Shown: piece after piece, positions 1 through 54,143 of the stretch | How positions within the stretch are numbered: position 1 is the stretch's first letter | How the letters are laid out: every line of letters begins with the position of its first letter | DNA from: Hemiscyllium ocellatum | Lineage: Eukaryota | Direction: 5' to 3' | Assembly: GCF_020745735.1 (NCBI RefSeq) | Contig: NC_083440.1 | Span: forward strand, 31,978,468-32,042,467 | Length of the DNA: 64,000 nt | Notes under the pieces: generated by a model | What the model saw: the letters and a program-made list of their open reading frames with translations, nothing else | Told to the model about the DNA's origin: nothing | Database searches by the model: none | Position numbers and translations under genes: made by a program

Positions 1-3000
1 ATTCAATGAATCACACCATATTCCTTGTTTCAATCGAACAAACATTTGTTGATTCAAATTTTTAGTAAATCCTACTGCACTCGTTCTTTCCATGAAACAG
101 ACTGCACATGTAGAGGTACTCTCGTTGGATCAATGCCTCAAACTTAACGCATTGATTCAATCAAACATATTGAACAAATTTAGCCCATGAAGCAAACATT
201 GAATGAAAAAGAAAAGTTCTACTCATTGAACGAACACGTCCAGTTTCCTCCGTGGAGCAAATGTTTGCAGTTGCTTTGAATGAATCAATGCGTTAGGCTT
301 GTGTCATTAAACGAATGAGAGAACCTTTACTGATTTCACTCTGTTCCATTGAATGAACAAGTGCAGGAGGATTCACTGAATAAGTCAGTTACGTTTGTTC
401 CATTGAAACAAGGATTGTGGTTTGGTTCGTTGAATGAATGATTGCATTTGATTCAATTATTCAATGAATGCAGTTTGTTTCATTCAATGAAAACGGTGAG
501 CTTGACATATTGAATGAATCAGAGAAGCTCTTCTATTTGAATTAAGGCGGCCAGTTTGGTTCATGGAGTGAAGGTGCGCAGTTTGACAGAGACAACGCGT
601 GAAACCTATGGCTTGGAATGAATGAGAGTAGCTCATTGACAAGTGCAGCTTCTTTCATTGAATGAATGGGTGCAGTGTGCATTGAATGAACGCGACATTG
701 AATGAGTGAGAGTATCTGTATTCATTGAATTGACAAGTGTTGTTTGCTTCATGGGCTAAATTTGTTCAATATGTTTGATTGAATCAATGCGCTAACTTTG
801 AGGCATTGATCCAACGAGAGTACCTCTACATGTGCAGTCTGTTTCATTGAAAGAACGAGTGCAGTAGACTCACTAAAAATTTGAATCAACAAATGTTTGT
901 TCGATTGAAACAAGGAATATGGTGTGATTCATTGAATCAATTCAATGATTTAATGAATGCAGTTTGTATAATTGAATGAAAGCGTTGTGCTTGACACTTT
1001 AAATGAATGAGAGAAGCTCTATACTGAACAGGTGCAGTTTGGTTCATGGATTGAATGTGTGCTGCATTCTTTGAATCTTTGCATCAAACTACAATCACTG
1101 ATTCAATGAATCAAATCTTATTTCTTGTTTCAATGGAACAAACCTAACTCACACAGTTAGTGATTCAAACTGCACACTTTCATTCAATGAAATAGGCTGC
1201 ACTTGTCAATTCAATGAGTAGAGTTATTCTCATTCGTTCAATGTCACAGGCTTCACACATTGTCTCAATCAAACTGCACACATTCAATCCATGAACTAAA
1301 CTGCACCTGTTAATTTAATGAGTATAGAGCTTCTCTCATTCATTCAAAGTGACAAGCACAACGCTTTCATTCAATTATACAAACTGCATTCATTAAATCA
1401 TGAATTGATTCAACGAATCAAACCTCTTTCCTTGTTTCAATCGAACAAACGTAATTGACTTATTGAGTGAATCCTCCTGCACTCGGTCATTCAATGCAAC
1501 AGACTGCAATCAGTAAAGGTTCACTCATTCGTTTAATGACACAAGCCTAACGCATTGATTCAATCAAAGAAACGGCAAACATTTCCTCCATGGAGGAAAC
1601 TGCACGTGTTCGTTCAATGAGTAGAACTTTTCTTTTTCATTCAATACCTCGAGCTTAACGCTTTAATTCTATGAATCAAGCTGCATTCATTCTTTGATTC
1701 ATATTTCAATCATTGATTCAAAGAATCAAATGGAATTCATTGATTTAAGTGTACTAACATCACTTTATTTGAGGAGTGAATTCAACTGCGTTCATTCTAT
1801 TAATGAATCAAACTGCAAACATTCATTCGATGAGAAACATGGCAAGTCCTGTTCCAATGAATCTAGCTTTTGCCATTCATTCAATGAAGGAAACTGCACG
1901 CGTTCATTGAATGATACAAACTGCATGCGTTCATTAAATGAAACAGACTTCACTTGTTCATTTAATATAAACAGCTTTTCTCGTTGACTCAAGCTTTACA
2001 CTTTCATTCAATGAAAGCAACTGCATTCATTCAATCATTGATTCAAACTGCCATCCTTCAGTCAATGAATCAATCAGTATCAATCGACACAATAAAATAA
2101 ATCACGTTTCCTTCGTGAACAAAACAGAAAACCTGTATTCAATGAAATACACTGCACGTCTTAATTCAATGAGTGGAGCACCGGCCATTCATTCAATACC
2201 ACGTGCAAAACGCATTCATTCAATGAAACGAACCGCACGCATTCAATACAGACTGCAGGTCTAAATTCAATTTTTAGATCTTCGTTCATTAATTCAATGG
2301 ATCAAGCTTATCGCTTTCACTCAATGAAACAAGCTGCATTCATTGAATCATGGCATCAACCTACATTCACTGATTCAATGAATCAAACCTTATTTCTTGT
2401 TTCAATGGAACAAACCTAACTCACACAGTTAGTGATTCAAACTGCACACTTTCATTCAATGAAATAGGCTGCAATTGTCAATCCAATGAGTTGAGTTACT
2501 CTCATTCGTTCAATGTCACAAGCTTCACACATTGTCTCAATCAAATTGCACACATTCAATCCATAAACCAAACTGCACCTGTTAATTCAATGAGTATGGA
2601 GCTCCTCTCATTCATTCAAAGTGTCAAGCACAATGCTTTCATTCAATTATACAAACTGCATTCATTAAATCATTGAATTGATTCAATGAATCACACCATA
2701 TTCCTTGTTTCAATCGAACAAACATTTGTTGATTCAAATTTTTAGTAAGTCCTACTGCACTCGTTCTTTCAATGAAACAGACTGCACATGTAGAGGTACT
2801 CTCGTTGGATCAATGCCTCAAACTTAACGCATTGATTCAATCAAACATATTGAACAAATTTAGCCCATGAAGCAAACATTGAATGAAAAAGAAAAGTTCT
2901 ACTCATTGAACGACCACGTCCAGTTTCCTCCGTGGAGCAAATGTTTTGCAGTTTCTTTGAATGAATCAATGCGTTAGGCTTGTGTCATTAAACGAATGAG

Positions 3001-6000
3001 AGAACCTTTACTGATTTCACTCTGTTCCATTGAATGAACAAGTGCAGGAGGATTCACTGAATAAGTCAGTTACGTTTGTTCCATTGAAACAAGGATTGTG
3101 GTTTGGTTCGTTGAATGAATGATTGCATTTTGATTCAATTATTCAATGAATGCAGTTTGTTTCATTCAATGAAAATGGTGAGCTTGACATATTGAATGAA
3201 TCAGAGAAGCTCTTCTATTTGAATTAAGGCGGCCAGTTTGGTTCATGGAGTGAAGGTGCGCAGTTTGACAGAGACAACGCGTGAAACCTGTGGCTTGGAA
3301 TGAATGAGAGTAGCTCATTGACAAGTGCAGCTTCTTTCATTGAATGAATGGGTGCAGTGTGCATTGAATGAACGCGACATTGAATGAGTGAGAGTATCTG
3401 TATTCATTGAATTGACAAGTGTTGTTTGCTTCATGGGCTAAATTTGTTCAATATGTTTGATTGAATCAATGCGTTAAGTTTGAGGCATTGATCCAACGAG
3501 AGTACCTCTACATGTGCAGTCTGTTTCATTGAAAGAACGAGTGCAGTAGACTCACTAAAAATTTGAATCAACAAATGTTGGTTCGATTGAAACAAGGAAT
3601 ATGGTGTGATTCATTGAATCAATTCAATGATTTAATGAATGCAGTTTGTATAATTGAATGAAAGCGTTGTGCTTGACACTTTAAATGAATGAGAGAAGCT
3701 CTATACTTAACAGGTGCAGTTTGGTTCATGGATTGAATGTGTGCTGCATTCATTGAATCTTTGCATCAAACTACAATCACTGATTCCATGAATCAAATCT
3801 TATTTCTTGTTTCAATGGAACAAACCTAACTCACACAGTTAGTGATTCAAACTGCACACTTTCATTCAATGAAATAGGCTGCACTTGTCAATTCAATGAG
3901 TAGAGTTATTCTCATTCGTTCAATGTCACAGGCTTCACACATTGTCTCAATCAAACTGCACACATTCAATCCATGAACTAAACTGCACCTGTTAATTTAA
4001 TGAGTATAGAGCTTCTCTCATTCATTCAAAGTGACAAGCACAACGCTTTCATTCAATTATACAAACTGCATTCATTAAATCATGAATTGATTCAACGAAT
4101 CAAACTTCTTTCCTTGTTTCAAACAAACAAACGTAATTGACTTATTGAGTGAATCCTCCTGCACTCGGTCATTCAATGCAGCAGACTGCAATCAGTAAAG
4201 GTTCACTCATTCGTTTAATGACACAAGCCTAACGCATTGATTCAATCAAAGAAACGGCAAACATTTCCTCCATGGAGGAAACTGCACGTGTTCGTTCAAT
4301 GAGTAGAACTTTTCTTTTTCATTCAATACCTCGAGCTTAACGCTTTAATTCTATGAATCAAGCTGCATTCATTCTTTGATTCATATTTCAATCATTGATT
4401 CAAAGAATCAAATGGAATTCATTGATTTAAGTGTACTAACATCACTTTATTTATGAAGTGAATTTAACTGCGTTCATTCTATTAATGAATCAAACTGCAA
4501 ACATTCATTCGATGAGAAACATGGCAAGTCCTGTTCCAATGAATCTAGCTTTTGCCATTCATTCAATGAAGGAAACTGCACGCGTTCATTGAATGATACA
4601 AACTGCATGCGTTCATTAAATGAAACAGACTTCACTTGTTCATTTAATATAAACAGCTTTTCTCGTTGACTCAAGCTTTACACTTTCATTCAATGAAAGC
4701 AACTGCATTCATTCAATCATTGATTCAAACTGCCATCCTTTAGTCAATGAATCAATCAGTATCAATCGACACAATAGAATAAATCACGTTTCCTTCGTGA
4801 ACAAAACAGAAAACCTGTATTCAATGAAATACACTGCACGTCTTAATTCAATGAGTGGTGCACCGGCCATTCATTCAATACCACGAGCAAAACGCATTCA
4901 TTCAATGAAACGAACTGCACGCATTCAATACAGACTGCAGGTCTAAATTCAATTTTTAGATCTTCATTCATTCATTCAATGGGTCAAGCTTATCGCTTAC
5001 ACTCAATGAAACAAGCCATGAATTCATTGAATCATGGCATCAAACTACAATCACTGATTCAATGAATCAAACCTTATTTCTTGTTTCAATGGAACAAACC
5101 TAACTCACACAGTTAGTGATTCAAACTGCACACTTTCATTCAATGAAATAGGCTGCAATTGTCAATCCAATGAGTTGAGTTACTCTCATTCGTTCAATGT
5201 CACAAGCTTCACACATTGTCTCAATCAAATTGCACACATTCAATCCATAAACCAAACTGCACCTGTTAATTCAATGAGTATGGAGCTCCTCTCATTCATT
5301 CAAAGTGTCAAGCACAATGCTTTCATTCAATTATACAAACTGCATTCATTAAATCATTGAATTGATTCAATGAATCACACCATATTCCTTGTTTCAATCG
5401 AACAAACATTTGTTGATTCAAATTTTTAGTAAGTCCTACTGCACTCGTTCTTTCAATGAAACAGACTGCACATGTAGAGGTACTCTCGTTGGATCAATGC
5501 CTCAAACTTAACGCATTGATTCAATCAAACATATTGAACAAATTTAGCCCATGAAGCAAACATTGAATGAAAAAGAAAAGTTCTACTCATTGAACGAACA
5601 CGTCCAGTTTCCTCCGTGGAGCAAATGTTTGCAGTTTCTTTGAATGAATCAATGCGTTAGGCTTGTGTCATTAAACGAATGAGAGAACCTTTACTGATTT
5701 CACTCTGTTCCATTGAATGAACAAGTGCAGGAGGATTCACTGAATAAGTCAGTTACGTTTGTTCCATTGAAACAAGGATTGTGGTTTGGTTCGTTGAATG
5801 AATGATTGCATTTTGATTCAATTATTCAATGAATGCAGTTTGTTTCATTCAATGAAAACGGTGAGCTTGACATATTGAATGAATCAGAGAAGCTCTTCTA
5901 TTTGAATTAAGGCGGCCAGTTTGGTTCATGGAGTGAAGGTGCGCAGTTTGACAGAGACAACGCGTGAAACCTATGGCTTGGAATGAATGAGAGTAGCTCA

Positions 6001-9000
6001 TTGACAAGTGCAGCTTCTTTCATTGAATGAATGGGTGCAGTGTGCATTGAATGAACGCGACATTGAATGAGTGAGAGTATCTGTATTCATTGAATTGACA
6101 AGTGTTGTTTGCTTCATGGGCTAAATTTGTTCAATGTTTGATTGAATCAATGCGTTAAGTTTGAGGCATTGATCCAACGAGAGTACCTCTACATGTGCAG
6201 TCTGTTTCATTGAAAGAACGAGTGCAGTAGACTCACTAAAAATTTGAATCAACAAATGTTTGTTCGATTGAAACAAGGAATATGGTGTGATTCATTGAAT
6301 CAATTCAATGATTTAATGAATGCAGTTTGTATAATTGAATGAAAGCGTTGTGCTTGACACTTTAAATGAATGAGAGAAGCTCTATACTTAACAGGTGCAG
6401 TTTGGTTCATGGATTGAATGTGTGCTGCATTCATTGAATCTTTGCATCAAACTACAATCACTGATTCAATGAATCAAATCTTATTTCTTGTTTCAATGGA
6501 ACAAACCTAACTCACACAGTTAGTGATTCAAACTGCACACTTTCATTCAATGAAATAGGCTGCACTTGTCAATTCAATGAGTAGAGTTATTCTCATTCGT
6601 TCAATGTCACAGGCTTCACACATTGTCTCAATCAAACTGCACACATTCAATCCATGAACTAAACTGCACCTGTTAATTTAATGAGTATAGAGCTTCTCTC
6701 ATTCATTCAAAGTGACAAGCACAACGCTTTCATTCAATTATACAAACTGCATTCATTAAATCATGAATTGATTCAACGAATCAAACCTCTTTCCTTGTTT
6801 CAATCGAACAAACGTAATTGACTTATTGAGTGAATCCTCCTGCACTCGGTCATTCAATGCAACAGACTGCAATCAGTAAAGGTTCACTCATTCGTTTAAT
6901 GACACAAGCCTAACGCATTGATTCAATCAAAGAAACGGCAGACCATGGAGGAAACTGCACGTGTTCGTTCAATGAGTAGAACTTTTCTTTTTCATTCAAT
7001 ACCTCGAGCTTAACGCTTTAATTCTATGAATCAAGCTGCATTCATTCTTTGATTCATATTTCAATCATTGATTCAAAGAATCAAATGGAATTCATTGATT
7101 TAACTGTACTAACATCACTTTATTTATGGAGTGAATTTAACTGCGTTCATTCTATTAATGAATCAAACTGCAAACATTCATTCGATGAGAAACATGGCAA
7201 GTCCTGTTCCAATGAATCTAGCTTTTGCCATTCATTCAATGAAGGAAACTGCACGCGTTCATTGAATGATACAAACTGCATGCGTTCATTAAATGAAACA
7301 GACTTCACTTGTTCATTTAATATAAACAGCTTTTCTCGTTGACTCAAGCTTTACACTTTCATTCAATGAAAGCAACTGCATTCATTCAATCATTGATTCA
7401 AACTGCCATCCTTTAGTCAATGAATCAATCAGTATCAATCGACACAATAAAATAAATCACGTTTCCTTCGTGAACAAAACAGAAAACCTGTATTCAATGA
7501 AATACACTGCACGTCTTAATTCAATGAGTGGAGCACCGGCCATTCATTCAATACCACGAGCAAAACGCATTCATTCAATGAAACGAACTGCACGCATTCA
7601 ATACAGACTGCAGGTCTAAATTCAATTTTTAGATCTTCATTCATTCATTCAATGGGTCAAGCTTATCGCTTTCACTCAATGAAACAAGCTGCATTCATTG
7701 AATCATGGCATCAAACTACAATCACTGATTCAATGAATCAAACCTTATTTCTTGTTTCAATGGAACAAACCTAACTCACACAGTTAGTGATTCAAACTGC
7801 ACACTTTCATTCAATGAAATAGGCTGCAATTGTCAATCCAATGAGTTGAGTTACTCTCATTCGTTCAATGTCACAAGCTTCACACATTGTCTCAATCAAA
7901 TTGCACACATTCAATCCATAAACCAAACTGCACCTGTTAATTCAATGAGTATGGAGCTCCTCTCATTCATTCAAAGTGTCAAGCACAATGCTTTCATTCA
8001 ATTATACAAACTGCATTCATTAAATCATTGAATTGATTCAATGAATCACACCATATTCCTTGTTTCAATCGAACAAACATTTGTTGATTCAAATTTTTAG
8101 TAAGTCCTACTGCACTCGTTCTTTCAATGAAACAGACTGCACATGTACTCTCGTTGGATCAATGCCTCAAACTTAACGCATTGATTCAATCAAACATATT
8201 GAACAAATTTAGCCCATGAAGCAAACATTGAATGAAAAAGAAAAGTTCTACTCATTGAACGAACACGTCCAGTTTCCTCCGTGGAGCAAATGTTTTGCAG
8301 TTTCTTTGAATGAATCAATGCGTTAGGCTTGTGTCATTAAACGAATGAGAGAACCTTTACTGATTTCACTCTGTTCCATTGAATGAACAAGTGCAGGAGG
8401 ATTCACTGAATAAGTCAGTTACGTTTGTTCCATTGAAACAAGGATTGTGGTTTGGTTCGTTGAATGAATGATTGCATTTTGATTCAATTATTCAATGAAT
8501 GCAGTTTGTTTCATTCAATGAAAACGGTGAGCTTGACATATTGAATGAATCAGAGAAGCTCTTCTATTTGAATTAAGGCGGCCAGTTTGGTTCATGGAGT
8601 GAAGGTGCGCAGTTTGACAGAGACAACGCGTGAAACCTATGGCTTGGAATGAATGAGAGTAGCTCATTGACAAGTGCAGCTTCTTTCATTGAATGAAAGG
8701 GTGCAGTGTGCATTGAATGAACGCGACATTGAATGAGTGAGAGTATCTGTATTCATTGAATTGACAAGTGTTGTTTGCTTCATGGGCTAAATTTGTTCAA
8801 TATGTTTGATTGAATCAATGCGTTAAGTTTGAGGCATTGATCCAACGAGGTACCTCTACATGTGCAGTCTGTTTCATTGAAAGAACGAGTGCAGTAGACT
8901 CACTAAAAATTTGAATCAACAAATGTTTGTTCGATTGAAACAAGGAATATGGTGTGATTCATTGAATCAATTCAATGATTTAATGAATGCAGTTTGTATA

Positions 9001-12000
9001 TTTGAATGAAAGCGTTGTGCTTGACACTTTAAATGAATGAGAGAAGCTCTATACTTAACAGGTGCAGTTTGGTTCATGGATTGAATGTGTGCTGCATTCA
9101 TTGAATCTTTGCATCAAACTACAATCACTGATTCAATGAATCAAATCTTATTTCTTGTTTCAATGGAACAAACCTAACTCACACAGTTAGTGATTCAAAC
9201 TGCACACTTTCATACAATGAAATAGGCTGCACTTGTCAATTCAATGAGTAGAGTTATTCTCATTCGTTCAATGTCACAGGCTTCACACATTGTCTCAATC
9301 AAACTGCACACATTCAATCCATGAACTAAACTGCACCTGTTAATTTAATGAGTATAGAGCTTCTCTCATTCATTCAAAGTGACAAGCACAACGCTTTCAT
9401 TCAATTATACAAACTGCATTCATTAAATCATGAATTGATTCAACGAATCAAACCTCTTTCCTTGTTTCAATCGAACAAACGTAATTGACTTATTGAGTGA
9501 ATCCTCCTGCACTCGGTCATTCAATGCAACAGACTGCAATCAGTAAAGGTTCACTCATTCGTTTAATGACACAAGCCTAACGCATTGATTCAATCAAAGA
9601 AACGGCAAACATTTCCTCCATGGAGGAAACTGCACGTGTTCGTTCAATGAGTAGAACTTTTCTTTTTCATTCAATACCTCGAGCTTCAATTCTATGAATC
9701 AAGCTGCATTCATTCTTTGATTCATATTTCAATCATTGATTCAAAGAATCAAATGGAATTCATTGATTTAAGTGTACTAACATCACTTTATTTATGGAGT
9801 GAATTTAACTGCGTTCATTCTATTAATGAATCAAACTGCAAACATTCATTCGATGAGAAACATGGCAAGTCCTGTTCCAATGAATCTAGCTTTTGCCCTT
9901 CATTCAATGAAGGAAACTGCACGCGTTCATTGAATGATACAAACTGCATGCGTTCATTAAATGAAACAGACTTCACTTGTTCATTTAATATAAACAGCTT
10001 TTCTCGTTGACTCAAGCTTTACACTTTCATGCATTCATTCAATCATTGATTCAAACTGCCATCCTTTAGTCAATGAATCAATCAGTATCAATCGACACAA
10101 TAAAATAAATCACGTTTCCTTCGTGAACAAAACAGAAAACCTGTATTCAATGAAATACACTGCACGTCTTAATTCAATGAGTGGAGCACCGGCCATTCAT
10201 TCAATACCACGAGCAAAACGCATTCATTCAATGAAACGAACTGCACGCATTCAATACAGACTGCAGGTCTAAATTCAATTTTTAGATCTTCATTCATTCA
10301 TTCAATGGGTCAAGCTTATCGCTTTCACTCAATGAAACAAGCTGCATTCATTGAATCATGGCATCAAACTACAATCACTGATTCAATGAATCAAACCTTA
10401 TTTCTTGTTTCAATGGAACAAACCTAACTCACACAGTTAGTGATTCAAACTGCACACTTTCATTCAATGAAATAGGCTGCAATTGTCAATCCAATGAGTT
10501 GAGTTACTCTCATTCGTTCAATGTCACAAGCTTCACACATTGTCTCAATCAAATTGCACACATTCAATCCATAAACCAAACTGCACCTGTTAATTCAATG
10601 AGTATGGCGCTCCTCTCATTCATTCAAAGTGTCAAGCACAATGCTTTCATTCAATTATACAAACTGCATTCATTAAATCATTGAATTGATTCAATGAATC
10701 ACACCATATTCCTTGTTTCAATCGAACAAACATTTGTTGATTCAAATTTTTAGTAAGTCCTACTGCACTCGTTCTTTCAATGAAACAGACTGCACATGTA
10801 GAGGTACTCTCGTTGGATCAATGCCTCAAACTTAACGCATTGATTCAATCAAACATATTGAACAAATTTAGCCCATGAAGCAAACATTGAATGAAAAAGA
10901 AAAGTTCTACTCATTGAACGAACACGTCCAGTTTCCTCCGTGGAGCAACTGTTTTGCTGTTTCTTTGAATGAATCAATGCGTTAGGCTTGTGTCATTAAA
11001 CGAATGAGAGAACCTTTACTGATTTCACTCTGTTCCATTGAATGAACAAGTGCAGGAGGATTCACTGAATAAGTCAGTTACGTTTGTTCCATTGAAACAA
11101 GGATTGTGGTTTGGTTCGTTGAATGAATGATTGCATTTTGATTCAATTATTCAATGAATGCAGTTTGTTTCATTCAATGAAAACGGTGAGCTTGACATAT
11201 TGAATGAATCAGAGAAGCTCTTCTATTTGAATTTAGGCGGCCAGTTTGGTTCATGGAGTGAAGGTGCGCAGTTTGACAGAGACAACGCGTGAAACCTATG
11301 GCTTGGAATGAATGAGAGTAGCTCATTGACAAGTGCAGCTTCTTTCATTGAATGAATGGGTGCAGTGTGCATTGAATGAACGCGACATTGAATGAGTGAG
11401 AGTATCTGTATTCATTGAATTGACAAGTGTTGTTTGCTTCATGGGCTAAATTTGTTCAATATGTTTGATTGAATCAATGCGTTAAGTTTGAGGCATTGAT
11501 CCAACGAGAGTACCTCTACATGTGCAGTCTGTTTCATTGAAAGAACGAGTGCAGTAGACTCACTAAAAATTTGAATCAACAAATGTTTGTTCGATTGAAA
11601 CAAGGAATATGGTGTGATTCATTGAATCAATTCAATGATTTAATGAATGCAGTTTGTATAATTGAATGAAAGCGTTGTGCTTGACACTTTAAATGAATGA
11701 GAGAAGCTCTATACTTAACAGGTGCAGTTTGGTTCATGGATTGAATGTGTGCTGCATTCATTGAATCTTTGCATCAAACTACAATCACTGATTCAATGAA
11801 TCAAATCTTATTTCTTGTTTCAATGGAACAAACCTAACTCACACAGTTAGTGATTCAAACTGCACACTTTCATTCAATGAAATAGGCTGCACTTGTCAAT
11901 TCAATGAGTAGAGTTATTCTCATTCGTTCAATGTCACAGGCTTCACACATTGCCTCAATCAAACTGCACACATTCAATCCATGAACTAAACTGCACCTGT

Positions 12001-15000
12001 TAATTTAATGAGTATAGAGCTTCTCTCATTCATTCAAAGTGACAAGCACAACGCTTTCATTCAATTATACAAACTGCATTCATTAAATCATGAATTGATT
12101 CAACGAATCAAACCTCTTTCCTTGTTTCAATCGAACAAACGTAATTGACTTATTGAGTGAATCCTCCTGCACTCGGTCATTCAATGCAATAGACTGCAAT
12201 CAGTAAAGGTTCACTCATTCGTTTAATGACACAAGCCTAACGCATTGATTCAATCAAAGAAACGGCAAACATTTCCTCCATGGAGGAAACTGCACGTGTT
12301 CGTTCAATGAGTAGAACTTTTCTTTTTCATTCAATACCTCGAGCTTAACGCTTTAATTCTATGAATCAAGCTGCATTCATTCTTTGATTCATATTTCAAT
12401 CATTGATTCAAAGAATCAAATGGAATTCATTGATTTAAGTGTACTAACATCACTTTATTTATGGAGTGAATTTAACTGCGTTCATTCTATTAATGAATCA
12501 AACTGCAAACATTCATTCGATGAGAAACATGGCAAGTCCTGTTCCAATGAATCTAGCTATTGCCATTCATTCAATGAAGGAAACTGCACGCGTTCATTGA
12601 ATGATACAAACTGCATGCGTTCATTAAATGAAACAGACTTCACTTGTTCATTTAATATAAACAGCTTTTCTCGTTGACTCAAGCTTTACACTTTCATTCA
12701 ATGAAAGCAACTGCATTCATTCAATCATTGATTCAAACTGCCATCCTTTAGTCAATGAATCAATCAGTATCAATCGATACAATAAAATAAATCACGTTTC
12801 CTTCGTGAACCAAACAGAAAACCTGTATTCAATGAAATACACTGCACGTCTAAATTCAATGAGTGGAGCACCGGCCATTCATTCAATACCACGAGCAAAA
12901 CGCATTCATTCAATGAAACGAACTGCACGCATTCAATACAGACTGCAGGTCTAAATTCAATTTTTAGATCTTCGTTCATTCATTCAATGGTCAAGCTTAT
13001 CGCTTTCACTCAATGAAACAAGCTGCATTCATTGAATCATGGCATCAAACTACAATCACTGATTCAATGAATCAAACCTTATTTCTTGTTTCAATGGAAC
13101 AAACCTAACTCACACAGTTAGTGATTCAAACTGCACACTTTCATTCAATGAAATAGGCTGCACTTGTCAATTCAATGAGGAGAGTTATTCTCATTCGTTC
13201 AATGTCACAGGCTTCACACATTGTCTCAATCAAACTGCACACATTCAATCCATGAACTAAACTGCACCTGTTAATTTAATGAGTATAGAGCTTCTCTCAT
13301 TCATTCAAAGTGACAAGCACAACGCTTTCATTCAATTATACAAACTGCATTCATTAAATCATGAATTGATTCAACGAATCAAACCTCTTTCCTTGTTTCA
13401 ATCGAACAAACGTAATTGACTTATTGAGTGAATCCTCCTGCACTCGGTCATTCAATGCAACAGACTGCAATCAGTAAAGGTTCACTCATTCGTTTAATGA
13501 CACAAGCCTAACGCATTGATTCAATCAAAGAAACGGCAAACATTTCCTCCATGGAGGAAACTGCACGTGTTCGTTCAATGAGTAGAACTTTTCTTTTTCA
13601 TTCAATACCTCGAGCATAACGCTTGAATTCTATGAATCAAGCTGCATTCATTCTTTGATTCATATTTCAATCATTGATTCAAAGAATCAAATGGAATTCA
13701 TTGATTTAAGTGTACTAACATCACTTTATTTATGGAGTGAATTTAACTGCGTTCATTCTATTAATGAATCAAACTGCAAACATTCATTCGATGAGAAACA
13801 TGGCAAGTCCTGTTCCAATGAATCTAGCTATTGCCATTCATTCAATGAAGGAAACTGCACGCGTTCATTGAATGATACAAACTGCATGCGTTCATTAAAT
13901 GAAACAGACTTCACTTGTTCATTTAATATAAACAGCTTTTCTCGTTGACTCAAGCTTTACACTTTCATTCAATGAAAGCAACTGCATTCATTCAATCATT
14001 GATTCAAACTGCCATCCTTTAGTCAATGAATCAATCAGTATCAATCGACACATTAAAATAAATCACGTTTCCTTCGTGAACAAAACAGAAAACCTGTATT
14101 CAATGAAATACACTGCACGTCTTAATTCAATGAGTGGAGCACCGGCCATTCATTCAATACCACGAGCAAAACGCATTCATTCAATGAAACGAACTGCACG
14201 CATTCAACACAGACTGCAGGTCTAAATTCAATTTTTAGATCTTCGTTCATTCATTCAATGTGTCAAGCTTATCGCTTTCACTCAATGAAACAAGCTGCAT
14301 TCATTGAATCATGGCATCAAACTACAATCACTGATTCAATGAATCAAACCTTATTTCTTGTTTCAATGGAACAAACCTAACTCACACAGTTAGTGATTCA
14401 AACTGCACACTTTCATTCAATGAAATAGGCTGCAATTGTCAATCCAATGAGTTGAGTTACTCTCATTCGTTCAATGTCACAAGCTTCACACATTGTCTCA
14501 ATCAAATTGCACACATTCAATCCATAAACCAAACTGCACCTGTTAATTCAATGAGTATGGAGCTCCTCTCATTCATTCAAAGTGTCAAGCACAATGCTTT
14601 CATTCAATTATACAAACTGCATTCATTAAATCATTGAATTGATTCAATGAATCACACCATATTCCTTGTTTCAATCGAACAAACATTTGTTGATTCAAAT
14701 TTTTAGTAAGTCCTACTGCACTCGTTCTTTCAATGAAACAGACTGCACATGTAGAGGTATTCTCGTTGGATCAATGCCTCAAACTTAACGCATTGATTCA
14801 ATCAAACATATTGAACAAATTTAGCCCATGAAGCAAACATTGAATGAAAAAGAAAAGTTCTACTCATTGAACGAACACGTCCAGTTTCCTCCGTGGAGCA
14901 AATGTTTTGCTGTTTCTATGAATGAATCAATGCGTTAGGCTTGTGTCATTAAACGAATGAGAGAACCTTTACTGATTTCACTCTGTTCCATTGAATGAAC

Positions 15001-16918
15001 AAGTGCAGGAGGATTCACTGAATAAGTCAGTTACGTTTGTTCCATTGAAACAAGGATTGTGGTTTGGTTCGTTGAATGAATGATTGCATTTTGATTCAAT
15101 TATTCAATGAATGCAGTTTGTTTCATTCAATGAAAACGGTGAGCTTGACATATTGAATGAATCAGAGAAGCTCTTCTATTTGAATTAAGGCGGCCAGTTT
15201 GGTTCATGGAGTGAAGGTGCGCAGTTTGACAGAGACAACGCGTGAAACCTATGGCTTGGAATGAATGAGAGTAGCTCATTGACAAGTGCAGCTTCTTTCA
15301 TTGAATGAATGGGTGCAGTGTGCATTGAATGAACGCGACATTGAATGAGTGAGAGTATCTGTATTCATTGAATTGACAAGTGTTGTTTGCTTCATGGGCT
15401 AAATTTGTTCAATATGTTTGATTGAATCAATGCGTTAAGTTTGAGGCATTGATCCAACGAGAGTACCTCTACATGTGCAGTCTGTTTCATTGAAAGAACG
15501 AGTGCAGTAGACTCACTAAAAATTTGAATCAACAAATGTTTGTTCGATTGAAACAAGGAATATGGTGTGATTCATTGAATCAATTCAATGATTTAATGAA
15601 TGCAGTTTGTATATTTGAATGAAAGCGTTGTGCTTGACACTTTAAATGAATGAGAGAAGCTCTATACTTAACAGGTGCAGTTTGGTTCATGGATTGAATG
15701 TGTGCTGCATTCATTGAATCTTTGCATCAAACTACAATCACTGATTCCATGAATCAAATCTTATTTCTTGTTTCAATGGAACAAACCTAACTCACACAGT
15801 TAGTGATTCAAACTGCACACTTTCATTCAATGAAATAGGCTGCACTTGTCAATTCAATGAGTAGAGTTATTCTCATTCGTTCAATGTCACAGGCTTCACA
15901 CATTGCCTCAATCAAACTGCACACATTCAATCCATGAACTAAACTGCACCTGTTAATTTAATGAGTATAGAGCTTCTCTCATTCATTCAAAGTGACAAGC
16001 ACAACGCTTTCATTCAATTATACAAACTGCATTCATTAAATCATGAATTGATTCAACGAATCAAACCTCTTTCCTTGTTTCAATCGAACAAACGTAATTG
16101 ACTTATTGAGTGAATCCTCCTGCACTCGGTCATTCAATGCAATAGACTGCAATCAGTAAAGGTTCACTCATTCGTTTAATGACACAAGCCTAACGCATTG
16201 ATTCAATCAAAGAAACGGCAAACATTTCCTCCATGGAGGAAACTGCACGTGTTCGTTCAATGAGTAGAACTTTTCTTTTTCATTCAATACCTCGAGCTTA
16301 ACGCTTTAATTCTATGAATCAAGCTGCATTCATTCTTTGATTCATATTTCAATCATTGATTCAAAGAATCAAATGGAATTCATTGATTTAAGTGTACTAA
16401 CATCACTTTATTTATGGAGTGAATTTAACTGCGTTCATTCTATTAATGAATCAAACTGCAAACATTCATTCGATGAGAAATATGGCAAGTCCTGTTCCAA
16501 TGAATCTAGCTTTTGCCATTCATTCAATGAAGGAAACTGCACGCGTTCATTGAATGATACAAACTGCATGCGTTCATTAAATGAAACAGACTTCACTTGT
16601 TCAATTAATATAAACAGCTTTTCTCGTTGACTCAAGCTTTACACTTTCATTCAATGAAAGCAACTGCATTCATTCAATCATTGATTCAAACTGCCATCCT
16701 TTAGTCAATGAATCAATCAGTATCAATCGATACAATAAAATAAATCACGTTTCCTTCGTGAACCAAACAGAAAACCTGTATTCAATGAAATACACTGCAC
16801 GTCTAAATTCAATGAGTGGTGCACCGGCCATTCATTCAATACCACGAGCAAAACGCATTCATTCAATGAAACGAACTGCACGCATTCAATACAGACTGCA
16901 GGTCTAAATTCAATTTTT
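1..16918. repeat. Tandem satellite array with a ~2.67-kb higher-order unit. Units start at 1, 2681, 5365, 8036, 10689 and 14642; the fifth interval is 3953 bp; the last unit is cut by the gap.
   Basis: The marker ATTCAATGAATCACACCAT recurs at those positions. The same spurious 97-aa, 66-aa and 61-aa ORFs recur at matching offsets. The unit is made of short CATT/TTCATTCAATGAA/AACTGCA subrepeats. Confidence 0.97.
198..1062 (-). repeat. Inverted ~865-bp block inside the satellite unit, present in every full unit (e.g. 2878-3744)
   Basis: Motif polarity flips (TTGAATGAA/GTGCAGTT instead of TTCATTCAA/AACTGCAC). 198-435 is the reverse complement of ~1407-1645, and 741-1062 is the reverse complement of 2548-2878. 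Confidence 0.92.
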
Positions 16919-17418
16919 NNNNNNNNNNNNNNNNNNNNNNNNNNNNNNNNNNNNNNNNNNNNNNNNNNNNNNNNNNNNNNNNNNNNNNNNNNNNNNNNNN
17001 NNNNNNNNNNNNNNNNNNNNNNNNNNNNNNNNNNNNNNNNNNNNNNNNNNNNNNNNNNNNNNNNNNNNNNNNNNNNNNNNNNNNNNNNNNNNNNNNNNNN
17101 NNNNNNNNNNNNNNNNNNNNNNNNNNNNNNNNNNNNNNNNNNNNNNNNNNNNNNNNNNNNNNNNNNNNNNNNNNNNNNNNNNNNNNNNNNNNNNNNNNNN
17201 NNNNNNNNNNNNNNNNNNNNNNNNNNNNNNNNNNNNNNNNNNNNNNNNNNNNNNNNNNNNNNNNNNNNNNNNNNNNNNNNNNNNNNNNNNNNNNNNNNNN
17301 NNNNNNNNNNNNNNNNNNNNNNNNNNNNNNNNNNNNNNNNNNNNNNNNNNNNNNNNNNNNNNNNNNNNNNNNNNNNNNNNNNNNNNNNNNNNNNNNNNNN
17401 NNNNNNNNNNNNNNNNNN
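16919..17418. other. Assembly gap (500 N)
   Basis: Run of exactly 500 N; a round number typical of a scaffolding placeholder. Confidence 0.99.
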
Positions 17419-18555
17419 AAAAGAAGTTCTAGCTTGTTCAGCCTCTCCTTTTAACACTGAGTGCGAGCAACCATCCTTACATATTTTTCTGCACCGTTCC
17501 TGTTAATAACATCCTTCTCGAGGGCAAGGTGACTAAACAGAACACATGCTCCAACTGCAGCCTCACCCACCTCCTGTATAACTGTCGGTTTTTGTGAAGA
17601 CAGAATCTAAAGGCATGGATACAATTGCTCAGCTGTTCGTTGTCCTTTGTTATACATGTTCCCAATTGCCATCTGGATGGGGGACCTACCATTTGTCTTC
17701 ATCAATCTCTTTCTCTTATGCACTGTAGAACCTTGTAGCGTCAGTCTTCATGCTCCCTGCAAGCTTACTTTCTTTTGTACGTGTTTTCCCCATCTTAATC
17801 AAATCCCTTGGTCCTTCTTTGCTGATTCAAGACTGCTCTCAAACATCAGACCTATATTTTTCTTGGCCATTTCTATGCTATTTCCTTCAATTGGATGCTA
17901 TTAATTTCCTTAAGTAAGCCATGGATCGGCCCTCCTGTTACCCAATTTTGCTTTTGTACCAGACAGGAATAAATAGTTGTTGCAGATCCCCATGTTTCCT
18001 TGAATATTTGCAATGCCTATCTACTGTCACACCTTTAAGCAACTTTCACTGATCTATCAACGCCAACTCATGCCTTATATATCTTCATAGTTTCCTTTAT
18101 TAAAATTCAGCACCCTAGTCTCCAAATCAGCTGGCTCGCTCTCCATCTTGATAAAAAAGTTGTATCATGTCATGGTCACTCATCCCCAAGGAGTCTCACG
18201 CAGCTAGATTGGCAATGATTCCCTTCTCATTACACAGTCCCAGTCTAAGATGGCCTGCTCTCTAGTTGGTTCATCCACATATTGGTTAAGAAAACCATCC
18301 CGCATGTACTCCAGGAATTTTTCCTCTAAGACATTGTGGCTAATTTGATTTGTCCAATCTAGATGCAGATTAAAATCACCCATGATCACAGATGTCTCCA
18401 TATCACATGCTTGGCTAATTTCCTGTTGAATACTATTCCGATATGACCACTGCAGTCTGGGGGGTCTGTGTATGACACCCACTAATGTTTTTTTGTCCCT
18501 TGGTATTTCACAGCTCCACCCATACAGTCTCCACATTGTCAAAGCTAATGTCCTA
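17419..18555 (-). mobile_element. Degraded CR1-type LINE fragment (APE endonuclease/linker plus a 3' piece)
   Basis: The minus-strand ORF 18204-18578 has VGVIHRPP...VIMGDFNLHLDW...FLNQYVDEPTREQAILD, typical of CR1 ORF2 endonuclease. Confidence 0.75.
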
Positions 18556-18889
18556 AAAAGAGATGAACAAAAATACATGACCAGGAATTGAGATATTTCT
18601 GCTCAAATATTGATCTTGGTTTGATGCTAATTAGCCTTGTCGACTTTCAATGAATTGCTTCATAAAATCTGGGACCACCAGCAGAAGGTGATGAGCTAGA
18701 ACATTTGTGGAATTGCTTTCTCAGTAAATGAACATAGATACATTTTGTTGAGTTTTTCACAGTAGATGACAGTGCTTCTCCAGCTGGTGGAAGTGAGTGA
18801 CGCTGATAGTAGATCCTTCAACCAACACCTTCACTCATAAAAAGTTAAGGCACACAAAAGGTTGACTGAGGCTACTTAGTTTAACATCA

Positions 18890-28260: not shown

Positions 28261-28488
28261 AGGAGAAAGTGAGGACCGCAGATGCTGGAGATCAGAGCTT
28301 AAAAATGTGTTGCTGGAAAAGCGCAGCAGGTCAGGCAGCATCAAAGGAGCAGGAGAATCAACGTTTCGGGCATAAGCCCTTCTTCAGGAATCAGCCTTCA
28401 GAAGGGCTTATGCCCAAAACGTCGATTCTCCTGTTCCTTGGATGCTGCCTGACCTGCTGCGCTTTAACCAACAACACATTTTCAGCTC
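28261..28488. mobile_element. Palindromic Penelope-derived element, family 1; minus-strand hammerhead core at 28352-28392
   Basis: Head-to-head inverted arms. The minus strand reads CTGAAGA-A-GGGC-TTAT-GCCC-GAAAC-GTT-GATTC. Confidence 0.8.
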
Positions 28489-36633: not shown

Positions 36634-36935
36634 GTGTCCAGTCAGAGGTTGTTTTGACCCAGCCAGAGGCAGAGACTGGCCGTCCCGAAGGCAGCCTGAA
36701 ACTGACCTGTAAAACCAGCGGGTTCGATCTCAGCAGCTACTGGATGTACTGGGTCCGCCAGGTTCCCGGCCAGGGTCTGGAGTGGCTGCTTGAGTACAAG
36801 AATCCATCCAGCAATAACTATGCACCAGCGATTAAGGGTCGATTTACTGCGTCCAAAGACACTTCAAACATTTTCTCGTTGGACATGACTAACCTGAAGA
36901 TCGAAGACACCGCCATCTATTACTGTGCAAGATAC
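36634..36935 (+). CDS. IGHV: VH exon ([52 protein letters not shown]...[10 protein letters not shown]), germline and unrearranged
   Basis: AG acceptor at 36632-36633, conserved Cys, WVRQ and YYC, followed directly by an RSS. Shark VH-like sequence. Confidence 0.98.
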
Positions 36936-38699: not shown

Positions 38700-38950
38700 T
38701 TGCATTCTGTTGATTAGATTCTGAGTTTGTTTTACTTGATTCTGTTGAATTGAGTTGATTGGATTTTGGCTTTGTTTTTACTTGATTTTGTTGAATTGTG
38801 TTGATTGGCTTTTGGAATTGTTTTATTTGATTCTGTTGAACTGAATTGGTTGGATTCTGATGAAGTTTCATTCAAATCTTTTGTTTTGAGTTGATTGGAT
38901 TCTGATTTTATTTTCCTGGATTCTGTTGAATTGAGTTGATTGGATTCTTA
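38700..38950 (+). repeat. Degenerate ~45-bp G+T-rich minisatellite (~5 copies)
   Basis: GATTCTGTTGAATTGAGTTGATTGGATT-like motif at ~38738, 38784, 38829 and 38919. Confidence 0.75.
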
Positions 38951-40561
38951 TTCAGTTTGTGAAATTGATCTGCGTTTTCATGCTTTCTGAATTGGTGTTT
39001 TCTTTCTGGTGAGGAGATTGACTCTCTGGAATACTTTTCATTACCAATATTTGTGAAGTTCTTTTGTTTTTCATGAATCATTTCTGCATTTGTTAAACTT
39101 ATATGACACATTTTTCTCTGCTTGATTGAAAACATTACATCTATTTGTAACGGTCTGAAAAACAACTTAAGGCAGAAACCCGGAAGTGTGAGAAATGAAA
39201 AAAAACGAGTTTTTAATGCGTTGACTTTTTTAAAAAACTCCGTTCTAATTGTAAACGAACTGAATTTTGTTTTGAGTAGCCTCATTCAAAATAAAATTTG
39301 GGACTAAAATCTGAAACTGCAGAATTGATCAGATTACGTAATTGAAACTAACTTAAAATTATAATGTGGTAATATTTGTCCATTCAGTAATTTTGCTTTG
39401 ACCCTGAAGTGATTAATCAATATATGCCTTCAACCCCACTCTACTGTGCACTGCACAAGATTGTCATGATCAGGAAGGGTGTGCAGGTTGGAAATAAATT
39501 GAACTATTGCCAGAAACGTTACAGTTTTAAGTGTTAAGTCCCCTCACCAACAAGGTTGCTGTTATGACTTTTTATTTCTATTCAATTTAATCATTAGTTT
39601 GCTTGATTCTGAGCAGCTTTGTTAGACTTCAATTTGTTTTTTTTGTGAGGTTACATCATGTTCTTGGTTCTGTTGAAAATGTTTGCAGAGCTAGTTCTGC
39701 TGCAAACACACCGTGTTGTGATCTGGTGATCGTTGATCTGTTGAGGAGGGACTGTGCTTGGGGAACATTAAATGTGTTATATTTGGGAAACTGTTTCTGG
39801 TTTCTACATTGTTTTTGCAATGTTAACACGGTTGGTGACAGTGAACTGCTCTTTCCTCATTCAATACAGTCAGCATGCAAGTTAAAATTTCATAAAGCCT
39901 ATTATTAAGTGAAAGGCAAATCGCAAAGGTTTTAGAAATGAAGGGAAAACAGATACCTTCAGGCGCTATTTTTACTTAAAATAAATAATTAAGGATTAAT
40001 CTAATCCATGCTTTACAATCCAAATTCAAAACTCAACTATCTAGTTCAATCACAACGTCTGTCTTTAAACAGTTTACAAGTCATAGAGAAATATAAATAG
40101 AATTTCAAAAGTCTAATGTTCTAATAGTTCTTGCTCTTGAGCAAAAATGCCATGACTGTGCTATAATTGATCAAGAAACACCTTTCAATTCCGCTGTACA
40201 CGACATACATATTTTTCTGGCTGGAAAAGATCATTGGCAAAGACCATTTGGAAATTCTGCTCAAATCTATGAAGAACAGATCAGGTTCACTGCTTTGATC
40301 AGTTTCACACATAACTTGAGTTAATTAATTGTTATGTCCCTGATTAAAATGGATTTGCAGGATAAAAATAAAACATTAACTGAATTATTTAACCTGCACA
40401 GTACTTTAGGTGTTCCCAATCTGTGCATTTTAAATAAATAATTACATTTTACAACAAAATATCAACTGAAGAGTCATTCTTTCGGAAACAACTGCTATAG
40501 TGAGTTATGTGACCAAGGCCAAATTTCGAATTAATTAAAGTAATCCACTCATGAACTCGCA

Positions 40562-47269: not shown

Positions 47270-48740
47270 ATTTCCAAGTATGGGGACGGCAAACACGAGG
47301 GGACACAACTTTAAAGTGAGGGGAGATAGGTATAAGACAGATGGCAGAGGTAGTTTCTTTACTGATTGTGTAGTAAGGGTATGGAATGCTTTGCCTGCAA
47401 CGGTAGTAGATTTGCCAAGTTTAAGTACATTTAAGTTGTCATTACATAGAACATAGAAGGATACAGCGCAGTACAGATGTTGCGCCGACCGAATCCTACC
47501 TAACCTATACTAGCCCAATAACTTCCAAATGCCTATCAATGCCCGCTTAAATGACCATAAGAAGGAGAGTTCACCACTGATACGGGCAGGGCATTCCATG
47601 AACTCACAACCCGCTGTGTGAAGAATCTACCCCTAACCTCTGTCCTATACCTACCACCCCTTAATTTAAAGCTATGTCCCCTAGTAACACCTGACTCCAT
47701 TAGCGGTAAAAGGTTCTTAGTATCTACCCTATCTAAACCCCTAATCATCTTATACACTTCTATCAGATCTCCCCTAAACCTTCTCTTCTCCAATGAGAAC
47801 AGCCCCAAGTGCCTCAGCCTTTCCTCATAAGATTTTCCTACCATTCCAGGCAACATCCTGGTAAACCTCCTCTGCACTCGTTCTAAAGCTTCCACATCCT
47901 TCCTATAGTATGGCGACCAAAACTGCACACAATACTCCAGATGAGCCGCACCAGAGTCTTATACAACTGCAACATGACCTCAGGACTCCGGAACTCAATT
48001 CCTCTGCCAATAAAGCCCAGTACACCATATGCCTTCCTCACAGCACTATTTACCTGGGTGGCAACTTTCAGAGATCTGTGTACATGGACACCAAGATCCC
48101 TCTGCTCATCCACACTACCAAGTAGCCTACCATTAGCCCAGTAATCCATCATCTTGTTATTCCTACCAAAGTGAACGACTTCGCACTTAGCTACATTGAA
48201 TTCCATTTGCCACATTTCCGCCCAGCTCTGCAACTTATCTATATCCCGCTGTAACCTACCACTTCCTTCCTCACTATCCACAACTCCACCGACTTTTGTG
48301 TCATCCGCAAACTTGCTTACCCAGCTTTCAAGTCCTTCCTCTAGATCATTTATAAAGATAACAAAAAGCAATGGTCCCAAAACAGATCCTTGTGGTACAC
48401 CGCTAGTAACTGCGCTCCAAGATGAACATAATCCATCAACTACTACCCTCTGTCTCCTTCCAGCCAGCCAATTCCTAATCCAAACCTCTAATGTATCCTC
48501 AATGCCATACCTCCGAAGTTTTAGCATTAGCCTACCATGGGGAACCTTATCGAACGCCTTACTAAAATCCATATACACAACATCTACTGCTTTACCCTCA
48601 TCCACTTGCCTGTCATTGGACAGGCATAAGGATGTACATGGAATAGTGTAGGTGGGATGGGCTTCATATTAGTATGTCAGAGCAGCGCAACATGGAGGGT
48701 CAAAAGGCCTGTACTGCGCTGTACTGTTCTATGTTCTATG
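47270..48740 (+). mobile_element. CR1 3' end (47270-47443 plus 48611-48740) split by a younger insertion
   Basis: The plus-strand 3' UTR resumes after the nested element and ends in CTGTTCTATGTTCTATG. Confidence 0.75.
47444..48610 (-). mobile_element. Young 5'-truncated CR1-type LINE with a near-intact RT (one frameshift near 47945) and a 7-bp TSD
   Basis: ORF 47883-48605 (VVYMDFSKAFDKVPH, GVPQGSVLGP, KFADDTK) continues in ORF 47536-47928. TGTCATT occurs at 47437-47443 and 48611-48617. Confidence 0.93.
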
Positions 48741-49779: not shown

Positions 49780-49849
49780 GTACGTATTGTGGGAACTGAG
49801 ATAAACAGAGCATCTGGGATTAATATGAATAAGGCATTATTTATAACCA

Positions 49850-51450: not shown

Positions 51451-51467
51451 CCACAACCTAAATTTGT

Positions 51468-54140: not shown

Positions 54141-54143
54141 TTA

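What the first reader, a model, noticed from the sequence alone, without database searches (positions are those of the whole stretch)
1..16918. Homogeneous 2.67-kb macrosatellite with a fixed internal inversion
Seen: five complete intervals plus a partial unit of near-identical sequence. Each unit has three levels: CATT-based motifs, diverged 0.3-0.5-kb submonomers and a 2.67-kb higher-order unit, and it always contains the same ~865-bp block in reverse orientation. Inference: the inversion arose once and was then amplified and homogenised by concerted evolution. A satellite whose repeating unit switches strand internally is unusual and is a candidate centromeric or pericentromeric family for this shark.
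Basis: partly seen in the sequence, partly recalled or inferred. Interest (0 to 1): 0.7.

Follow-up and report, generated by a model that had tools for sequence, protein, structure and literature searches.

The report
Shark satellite with built-in flipped block
A non-coding tandem repeat in a shark genome has a 2.68-kb unit built from 27-base motifs, and about a third of each unit points the other way; the structure is real, but repeats of this kind are already known from flour beetles, and nothing here shows a centromere role.

Summary
Window 1-16918 is a tandem array of about 2.68-kb units that agree at 99.0-99.7% of aligned bases. It starts at the window edge and ends at a 500-N assembly gap, so its true length is unknown.

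- **Base repeat:** a 27-bp monomer (AAACTGCAC..TTCATTCAATGA..), not a CATT motif. About 83 monomers tile each unit.
- **Inverted block:** all 26 monomers inside an 864-867-bp block lie on the minus strand, and 56 of 57 outside it lie on the plus strand. The block occurs six times. The left-junction 41-mer is identical in all six copies and the right-junction 41-mer in five (one mismatch).
- **Origin:** the block looks like an inverted copy of neighbouring satellite sequence, not a segment flipped in place. Its outer 322 bp forms an inverted repeat (95%; inner 198 bp 98.5%) with the 331 bp upstream. The two arms differ at sites that are the same in every unit, so the inverted copy predates amplification of the unit.
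- **Irregular unit:** one unit is 3,953 bp long. It carries a hybrid internal segment, the signature of unequal crossing-over.
- **Other species:** public contigs under four coded species labels hold block sequence that is nearly identical.
- **Negative results:** no RNA family, long ORF or CENP-B box was found.
- **Context:** an IgM gene cluster lies beyond the gap.

The single origin followed by amplification is supported. The claim of rarity and the centromere idea are not: beetle satellites have the same design. This is a new member of a known kind.

The parts
1..16918 (+). Tandem array of the 2.68-kb higher-order unit: a 198-bp partial unit, five full units (2680, 2684, 2665, 2659 and 3953 bp) and a 2079-bp partial unit. 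It is cut off by the window start and by the gap.
   Evidence: Self-BLAST; unit alignment at 98.9-99.7% identity.
198..1062 (-). Inverted block, copy 1 (27-bp monomers on the minus strand).
   Evidence: Junction 41-mers; GC skew.
2878..3744 (-). Inverted block, copy 2, used as the reference copy. It has three parts: b' at 2878-3364, the reverse complement of 3845-4327 at 82%; c' at 3365-3422; and a' at 3423-3744, the reverse complement of 2548-2878 at 95%.
5562..6425 (-). Inverted block, copy 3.
8227..9092 (-). Inverted block, copy 4.
10886..11752 (-). Inverted block, copy 5.
14839..15705 (-). Inverted block, copy 6.
2548..2878 (+). Forward arm 'a' of the inverted repeat (the 3' part of submonomer P1). 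Its partner is 3423-3744, and 544 bp separate the two.
   Evidence: BLAST at 95.2% over 331 bp, with the inner 198 bp at 98.5%. The differences between the arms are the same in every unit. As single-stranded DNA the region folds into a stem of about 320 bp at -444 kcal/mol.
3745..4327 (+). Forward submonomer P2.
   Evidence: 88% identical to P1 over 515 bp, with the first 346 bp at 94.5%.
4328..5018 (+). Segment Q: forward 27-bp monomers that are more diverged and have no close paralogue inside the unit.
   Evidence: Monomer map; BLAST.
5019..5562 (+). Forward submonomer P1, which ends at the left junction of the next inverted block.
13022..14292 (+). Extra 1271 bp in unit 5 (a P segment plus a Q segment, without an inverted block). 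Its P segment is a hybrid, P1-type at the first 3 diagnostic sites and P2-type at 114 of the other 115. The crossover lies at about 13080-13170.
16919..17418 (.). 500-N assembly gap that ends the array. No satellite sequence lies beyond it.

Best explanation
This is a non-coding, hierarchically built satellite DNA. A 27-bp monomer (consensus about AAACTGCAC-N4-TTCATTCAATGA-N3) diverged into submonomers of about 0.4-0.55 kb, called P-type here.

In an ancestral array, a stretch of about 0.87 kb holding roughly 1.7 P-type submonomers was copied in reverse orientation next to its source. A fold-back inverted duplication is the most likely route, followed by loss of the forward partner of the inner part. 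An equally possible route is a flip of the spacer by recombination between the two arms. Either way the result was an inverted repeat with 322-331-bp arms and a 544-bp spacer.

After the arms had drifted about 2-5% apart, one 2.68-kb segment (inverted block, P2, Q, P1) became the unit of amplification. Unequal crossing-over spread and homogenised it to about 99% identity.

Shown here: the anatomy, the single origin of both junctions, the order of events (inverted copy first, amplification second) and one unequal-crossover product. Inferred: the fold-back mechanism. No sequence-specific function is indicated. The DNA most likely behaves as ordinary heterochromatic tandem repeat.
For: - 27-bp periodicity and a clean monomer-by-monomer strand map: 26/26 minus inside the block, 56/57 plus outside, about 1 site expected by chance.
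- The left-junction 41-mer is identical in all six copies and the right-junction 41-mer in five, with one mismatch.
- Arm a' is 95% identical to the reverse complement of arm a (98.5% over the inner 198 bp). Part b' is only 82% identical to its nearest forward relative.
- The differences between a and a' are the same in every unit. At several of these sites a' keeps the state seen in the forward paralogue P2. The forward arm therefore changed after the inverted copy was made and before amplification.
- Units are 98.9-99.7% identical, whereas the internal paralogues are 72-95% identical.
- Unit 5 carries a hybrid segment with a P1 head and a P2 tail plus 1271 extra bases.
- The interior of the block is present nearly unchanged (0-2 mismatches per 200-400 bp) in contigs of runs under four coded species labels. 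The right junction is bridged with no mismatch by a contig of run X1.
- No ORF of 120 aa or more in the array and no Rfam family.
Against: - The left junction at 2878 is not bridged by any contig listed. Contigs stop exactly there, which is what a de Bruijn graph does at the end of a repeated arm. Independent support for that junction is therefore missing.
- The fold-back-plus-deletion history is one of at least two routes that give the same layout.
- The array is cut off at both ends and its genome-wide copy number is unknown. Whether it is a large satellite or a local macrosatellite stays open.
- None of these tools can exclude a function.
Confidence: 0.8

Rival explanations
1. The 1.2-kb arm-spacer-arm piece (2548-3744) is a fold-back or MITE-like transposon whose inverted ends are made of short tandem repeats. 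It landed in, or gave rise to, the satellite and was then amplified together with it.
For: The arms are 322-331 bp long, 95-98.5% alike and built of 27-bp repeats. This resembles fold-back elements and the 1093-bp TCAST transposon-like element with inverted termini of about 290 bp described in Tribolium (PMC12581902).
Against: - The homology between forward paralogues P1 and P2 runs straight through the outer end of the forward arm at 2548. Only the inverted copy stops there, so that point is not an element terminus.
- The sequences flanking 2548 and 3744 share no target-site duplication.
- No dispersed copy lies in the other 46.6 kb of the window.
- The spacer is itself made of the same monomers.
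Confidence: 0.07
2. The inversion-bearing unit is an assembly artefact: a collapsed or misjoined repeat.
For: The array ends in an assembly gap, so the assembler did fail here. The left junction is not bridged by the short-read contigs listed.
Against: - The six copies carry private substitutions and small indels, so they are not one sequence written out several times.
- The right junction is bridged with no mismatch by a contig of run X1.
- Sequence specific to the block occurs in runs from 4 species labels and 4 studies.
- It is unknown whether X1 comes from the animal that was assembled.
Confidence: 0.03
3. The array is a functional centromeric or pericentromeric satellite. Its dyad symmetry, recurring every 2.68 kb, would favour non-B DNA and loading of centromeric chromatin. 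This reading can hold together with the structural explanation.
For: - A long stem forms if the DNA becomes single-stranded.
- Dyad symmetry is a recurrent feature of centromeric satellites in Tribolium and is discussed as a possible requirement there (PMC12581902). Inverted elements also organise the putative cichlid centromeres (PMC13652916).
- The family persists across several species labels.
Against: - There are no data on chromosomal position, CENP-A or methylation.
- No CENP-B-box-like site lies in the array.
- Contig depths for unit-specific pieces are modest (80-190 in run X1, 3-10 in the others) and cannot be calibrated.
- No other window of this genome noted so far holds the family, though such a blank is not informative.
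- The scaffolded neighbour is an IgM gene cluster.
Confidence: 0.1

Closest known systems
Complex satellites of Tribolium flour beetles with inversely oriented subunits: the T. brevicornis 1061-bp major satellite (two inverted subunits of about 470 bp), T. audax TAUD2 (inverted subrepeats of about 700 bp) and T. madens MAD2 (704 bp). All are as cited in PMC12581902; see also PMC13081366.
   Same: The tandemly repeated unit itself holds related subunits in opposite orientation, so a dyad recurs once per unit. The unit is homogenised as a whole.
   Different: - This one is in a vertebrate (a shark).
- The unit is larger (2.68 kb) and asymmetric: 0.87 kb inverted against 1.8 kb forward.
- It is built on a 27-bp monomer.
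- There is no evidence that it is a major or centromeric genome component.
- No sequence similarity was tested, and none is expected.
Higher-order repeats of primate alpha satellite (PMC4131833).
   Same: Monomers diverge, and a multi-monomer block then becomes the unit of amplification. Copies of that unit are far more alike than the monomers inside it.
   Different: Alpha-satellite higher-order repeats are head-to-tail throughout, with 171-bp monomers. This unit has 27-bp monomers and a strand switch inside it.
Orientation switches and fold-back junctions inside satellite arrays: TfSat01 subarrays in T. freemani (PMC12581902), and a 9.6-kb head-to-head duplication in a 552-bp satellite of this same genome
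   Same: Head-to-head and tail-to-tail junctions between blocks of the same repeat, most simply explained by fold-back rearrangement.
   Different: In those cases the switch is a one-off or irregular event in a long array. Here the switch was captured inside the amplified unit and recurs with a fixed period.
Fold-back transposons with tandem repeats in their inverted ends (Tetris, Rehavkus; PMC12581902).
   Same: Long inverted arms made of short tandem repeats.
   Different: No target-site duplication was found, the arm boundary is not an element end, and no dispersed copies were seen.

Membership tests
Satellite DNA with higher-order repeat organisation | Head-to-tail tandem array of a multi-monomer unit. 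| tested here: met
   Offsets of about 2680 bp and its multiples at 97-98% identity. About 83 monomer sites of 27 bp tile each unit.
Satellite DNA with higher-order repeat organisation | Copies of the large unit are much more alike than the monomers or submonomers inside it. | tested here: met
   Units are 98.9-99.7% identical. P-type paralogues are 72-95% identical. The 27-bp autocorrelation is only 0.49.
Satellite DNA with higher-order repeat organisation | Long arrays, or high copy number in the genome. | tested here: inconclusive
   At least 16.9 kb is present, cut off by the window start and by an N gap. Contig depths could not be calibrated.
Complex satellite unit with inversely oriented subunits (Tribolium brevicornis / audax / madens type) | The repeating unit contains related subunits in opposite orientation. 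| tested here: met
   The 864-867-bp minus-strand block appears in each of six copies. Arm a' is 95% identical to the reverse complement of arm a.
Complex satellite unit with inversely oriented subunits (Tribolium brevicornis / audax / madens type) | Major satellite spanning the centromeric regions of all chromosomes. | not testable with these tools
   No chromosome coordinates, whole-assembly search or cytology is available here.
Centromeric satellite | Association with CENP-A chromatin or the primary constriction. | not testable with these tools
   This needs CUT&Tag or ChIP, a methylation dip, or FISH.
Centromeric satellite | CENP-B-box-like motif (a feature of some families only, not a universal one). 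| tested here: not met
   The pattern TTCGNNNNANNCGGG with up to 1 mismatch gives 3 hits in the window, none in 1-16918, against 2.5 expected by chance.
Fold-back / MITE-like DNA transposon | Long terminal inverted repeats. | tested here: met
   Arms of 322-331 bp at 95% identity, with a 544-bp spacer.
Fold-back / MITE-like DNA transposon | Target-site duplication, and arm ends that are element ends. | tested here: not met
   The flanks differ (ATCAAATT on one side, TGCATTCA on the other). P1/P2 homology continues across 2548.
Fold-back / MITE-like DNA transposon | Dispersed copies elsewhere in the genome. | tested here: inconclusive
   None was found in window 17419-64000. The rest of the genome cannot be searched here.
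Macrosatellite of the DXZ4 / D4Z4 type | Kilobase-scale unit that is GC-rich and carries an ORF or a transcribed element. | tested here: not met
   The unit is 2.68 kb but only 35-36% GC. It has no ORF of 120 aa or more and no RNA family. No RNA run holds it.

The most novel reading that the evidence does not exclude
The dyad that recurs every 2.68 kb (arms of about 0.33 kb) is kept by selection because it gives the array a regular series of hairpin- or cruciform-prone sites. That would make this a chromosome-specific centromeric or pericentromeric satellite of orectolobiform sharks, and a vertebrate counterpart of the dyad-symmetric centromeric satellites of Tribolium.
Probability: 0.07. Interest if true: 0.65.

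Novelty: new member of a known kind. Interest (0 to 1): 0.27.

Why it matters
Shark satellites are almost undescribed. The papers found on shark genomes mention satellite DNA only in bulk, and no paper in the held library contains the core motif in a relevant context.

This array shows the full life history of a complex satellite in readable form: monomer, then submonomer, then an inverted duplication, then capture into a higher-order unit, then an unequal-crossover product. The fixed differences between the arms put those events in order.

The array also offers two exact junction sequences. These can serve as markers to date the inverted copy across related sharks and to check repeat assembly. 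Beyond that it is an ordinary example of a known design. Its value would rise only if it mapped to centromeres.

Tried and rejected
- **Rfam.** A scan of two units at E<=1, and of the whole window at gathering scores, gave only chance-level miRNA matches (E 0.6-1). No hammerhead or other family was found in the array.
- **CENP-B box.** None in the array.
- **Coding capacity.** No ORF of 120 aa or more in the array apart from one that runs into the N gap. I did not scan shorter ORFs against Pfam.
- **Satellite sequence past the gap.** No BLAST hit, and none of the core 10-12-mers.
- **Organism-C contig.** This contig (run X10) joins the reverse complement of 4405..4206 to 3001..3148. At first it looked like a longer inverted block in another species. 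The switch sits exactly at the end of a 39-bp run shared by both places (2962-3000 equals the reverse complement of 4206-4244). It is best read as a chimeric de Bruijn path, so I set it aside.
- **Organism-D contig.** This contig (run X11) joins 2878 to 3881 and could be a form without the inverted block. But the same a|c junction also exists inside the inverted block, and the contig has only 48 letters with 4 mismatches on one side. It shows a direct submonomer-to-submonomer junction, not an inversion-free unit.
- **Very permissive self-alignment** matched everything to everything on both strands, because the core CATTCAATGAATG is itself nearly palindromic. I rejected it as evidence and replaced it with strand-specific motifs and the monomer matrix.
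- **Literature.** Searches for a described shark satellite of this kind found none.
- **Earlier notes of the scan.** Look-ups by sequence and by relatives were blank.
- **Copy number.** It could not be derived from contig depths.
Full report
**1. What is there**

Window 1-16918 is one tandem array. A self-BLAST gives direct matches at offsets of about 2680 bp and its multiples, at 97-98% identity counting gaps. I cut the array at a fixed landmark and aligned the pieces. The units are 2680, 2684, 2665, 2659 and 3953 bp long, with a 198-bp partial unit before them and a 2079-bp partial unit after. They agree at 98.9-99.7% of aligned positions.

The array begins at the first base of the window and stops at a run of 500 N at 16919-17418. 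Beyond the gap there is no trace of it: no BLAST hit, and none of its core 10-12-mers. The true length is therefore unknown, and its link to the rest of the window rests on scaffolding alone.

**2. The levels of repetition**

The strongest short period is 27 bp. Autocorrelation is 0.49 in the forward part and 0.42 in the inverted part, against a background of 0.27-0.28 with sd 0.03. There is a secondary 4-bp rhythm from CATTCATTCAATGAATG. I built a position weight matrix from the monomers (consensus about AAACTGCAC..TTCATTCAATGA..). It finds 83 non-overlapping sites in one unit, most of them exactly 27 bp apart. About one site is expected in a shuffled unit.

Tandem Repeats Finder sees a 104-bp period in part of each unit.

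Above that level lie paralogous segments of 0.4-0.55 kb. I call the two forward ones P1 (5019-5562 in the reference unit) and P2 (3745-4327). They are 94-95% identical over their first 300 or so bases and 72-75% identical further on. A 691-bp stretch, Q (4328-5018), holds more diverged monomers.

The one correction is that the base unit is a 27-mer, not a CATT motif.

**3. The strand switch is real and fixed**

- GC skew flips from C-rich to G-rich in six blocks.
- The strand-specific word ACTGCA[CAT] occurs 17 times in the reference unit, always outside 2878-3744. Its reverse complement occurs 7 times, always inside.
- In the monomer map, all 26 sites from 2900 to 3749 are on the minus strand. 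Of the 57 sites from 3768 to 5530, 56 are on the plus strand. The exception is a 7.9-bit site, close to the 6-bit cut-off.
- A 41-mer across the left junction recurs six times without a mismatch. A 41-mer across the right junction recurs six times with one mismatch in one copy. The block lengths are 864-867 bp.

Very permissive alignment was useless for this question, because the core motif is nearly palindromic and everything matched everything.

**4. Anatomy of the inverted block**

Read on the minus strand, the block consists of three parts:
- a', at 3744 down to 3423. It is 95.2% identical to the forward 331 bp just upstream of the block (a, 2548-2878). The inner 198 bp are 98.5% identical.
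- A 58-bp piece, c.
- b', at 3364 down to 2878. Its best forward relative is 3845-4327 in P2, at only 82%.

Each unit therefore holds an inverted repeat with 322-331-bp arms and a 544-bp spacer. As single-stranded DNA it folds into a stem of about 320 bp, at -444 kcal/mol.

Homology between the arms ends at exactly the base where the strand switches. The forward arm is simply the 3' part of P1. P1/P2 homology runs on across its outer end, and the flanks show no target-site duplication. This is why I read the block as an inverted copy of satellite sequence and not as an inserted fold-back element.

**5. Order of events**

I aligned all forward arms, all inverted arms and the P2 paralogues. The a and a' arms differ by several substitutions and an 8-bp indel, and these differences are the same in every unit. 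At several of these sites a' agrees with P2, so the forward arm changed after the inverted copy was made. Private changes in single arms are not mirrored in the partner arm of the same unit, so the arms are not being homogenised against each other.

The inverted copy therefore came first. The arms then drifted apart. After that the 2.68-kb segment was amplified.

Two histories give the observed layout, and I cannot separate them:
- A fold-back inverted duplication of a-c-b, followed by loss of the forward c-b next to the palindrome centre. This would explain why a' has a near-identical partner and b' has none.
- A flip of the spacer by recombination between arms that already existed.

The first is my preferred inference.

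**6. Unequal crossing-over caught in the act**

Unit 5 is 1271 bp too long (11751-13529 matches 13022-14806 at 96%). The extra P segment at 13022 carries P1 states at the first 3 of 118 diagnostic sites and P2 states at 114 of the remaining 115, with one ambiguous. It is therefore a recombinant between P1 of one unit and P2 of another, misaligned by the P2-to-P1 distance. The extra piece has no inverted block.

**7. Independent sequence data**

One unit was searched against public runs. Runs from two samples of the top organism hold 63-70% of its sampled 31-mers. Five other coded organisms hold 52%, 32%, 18%, 12% and 6%. No RNA run holds it. All the runs are stored as short assembled contigs.

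I laid four of them on 2401-5400:
- The interior of the inverted block is present in all four, with 0-2 mismatches per 200-400 bp.
- The right junction is bridged with no mismatch in run X1 (contig 3654-3825). It is nearly bridged in run X11, with 29 letters on one side.
- The left junction is not bridged in the rows shown. Contigs stop or start exactly at 2878, as expected where a repeated arm ends in a de Bruijn graph.
- A contig from organism C that seemed to extend the inverted block switches at the end of a 39-bp exact shared run. It is probably a chimeric path.
- A contig from organism D joins 2878 directly to 3881. This is a direct submonomer-to-submonomer junction of the same type as the a|c junction inside the block, and it does not prove an inversion-free unit.
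- Depths are 80-190 in X1 and 3-10 in the others. They cannot be turned into copy numbers.

The family is thus shared by several related species. An assembly artefact is unlikely, also because the six copies carry private differences.

**8. What it is not**

- No Rfam family reaches its threshold, and nothing better than E 0.6 appears in the array.
- No ORF of 120 aa or more lies in the array.
- No CENP-B-box-like site lies in the array.

**9. Surroundings**

Past the gap lie retroelement remains:
- an endonuclease fragment at 18204-18578;
- a CR1-type reverse transcriptase at 47883-48605 on the minus strand.

An immunoglobulin M heavy-chain cluster lies on the plus strand:
- a VH exon ending in YYCAR at about 36654-36930;
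- four constant-domain exons between 49551 and 56372. The last carries a mu-type secretory tail and matches solved IgM Fc chains at E 1e-51.

This says nothing in favour of a pericentromeric position.

**10. Comparison with what is known**

Satellites whose repeating unit contains inversely oriented subunits are described in flour beetles: the T. brevicornis 1061-bp satellite with two inverted subunits of about 470 bp, T. audax TAUD2 and T. madens MAD2. Frequent orientation switches occur in T. freemani arrays (PMC12581902; PMC13081366). [quoted passage not shown]

I did not check it. Another note calls the genome the epaulette shark (s1-228441). I did not verify the species.

I found no description of this family in shark papers. 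The held library lacks most subscription journals and repeat databases, so "not catalogued" is not shown.

**11. Verdict**

The single origin followed by amplification is supported and refined. The claims of rarity and of centromeric candidacy are not supported. This is a new member of a known kind of satellite. Its interest is mainly as a clean worked example and as a source of junction markers.

Noticed in passing
window 36654-36930 (+) and 49551-56372 (+): A shark-type IgM heavy-chain cluster. The VH exon reads ...[18 protein letters not shown]...DTAIYYCAR. Four C1-set constant exons follow, at about 49551-49799, 53194-53583, 55168-55536 and 55950-56372. The last ends in a mu-like secretory tail and matches IgM Fc structures at E 1e-51. 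I did not map the D and J segments or the recombination signals.
   Followed up: partly
window 47883-48605 (-), 47536-47928 (-), 18204-18578 (-): Remains of a CR1/L2-type non-LTR retrotransposon. The reverse-transcriptase domain (RVT_1, E 2e-22) contains the motif PQGSVLGP. A weak endonuclease fragment lies right after the gap.
   Followed up: partly
window 38709-38952: A short minisatellite: 5.4 copies of a 45-bp T/G-rich unit at 76% match. It lies between the VH exon and the constant exons.
   Followed up: no
window 28352-28392: Another first-stage note (s1-207296) reports a minimal hammerhead ribozyme in a Penelope-derived palindromic element here. My Rfam scan of the whole window at gathering thresholds returned nothing.
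   Followed up: partly
window 16919-17418: A 500-N scaffold gap directly abuts the satellite. That the array neighbours the IgM cluster therefore depends on scaffolding, not on contiguous sequence.
   Followed up: yes
window 2878-2913 and 4292-4327; 2962-3000 and 4206-4244: Two exact reverse-complement runs of 36 and 39 bp link the diverged inner part of the inverted block (82% overall) to forward P2. Islands of identity like these could reflect short gene-conversion tracts, and they cause chimeric paths in short-read graphs.
   Followed up: partly
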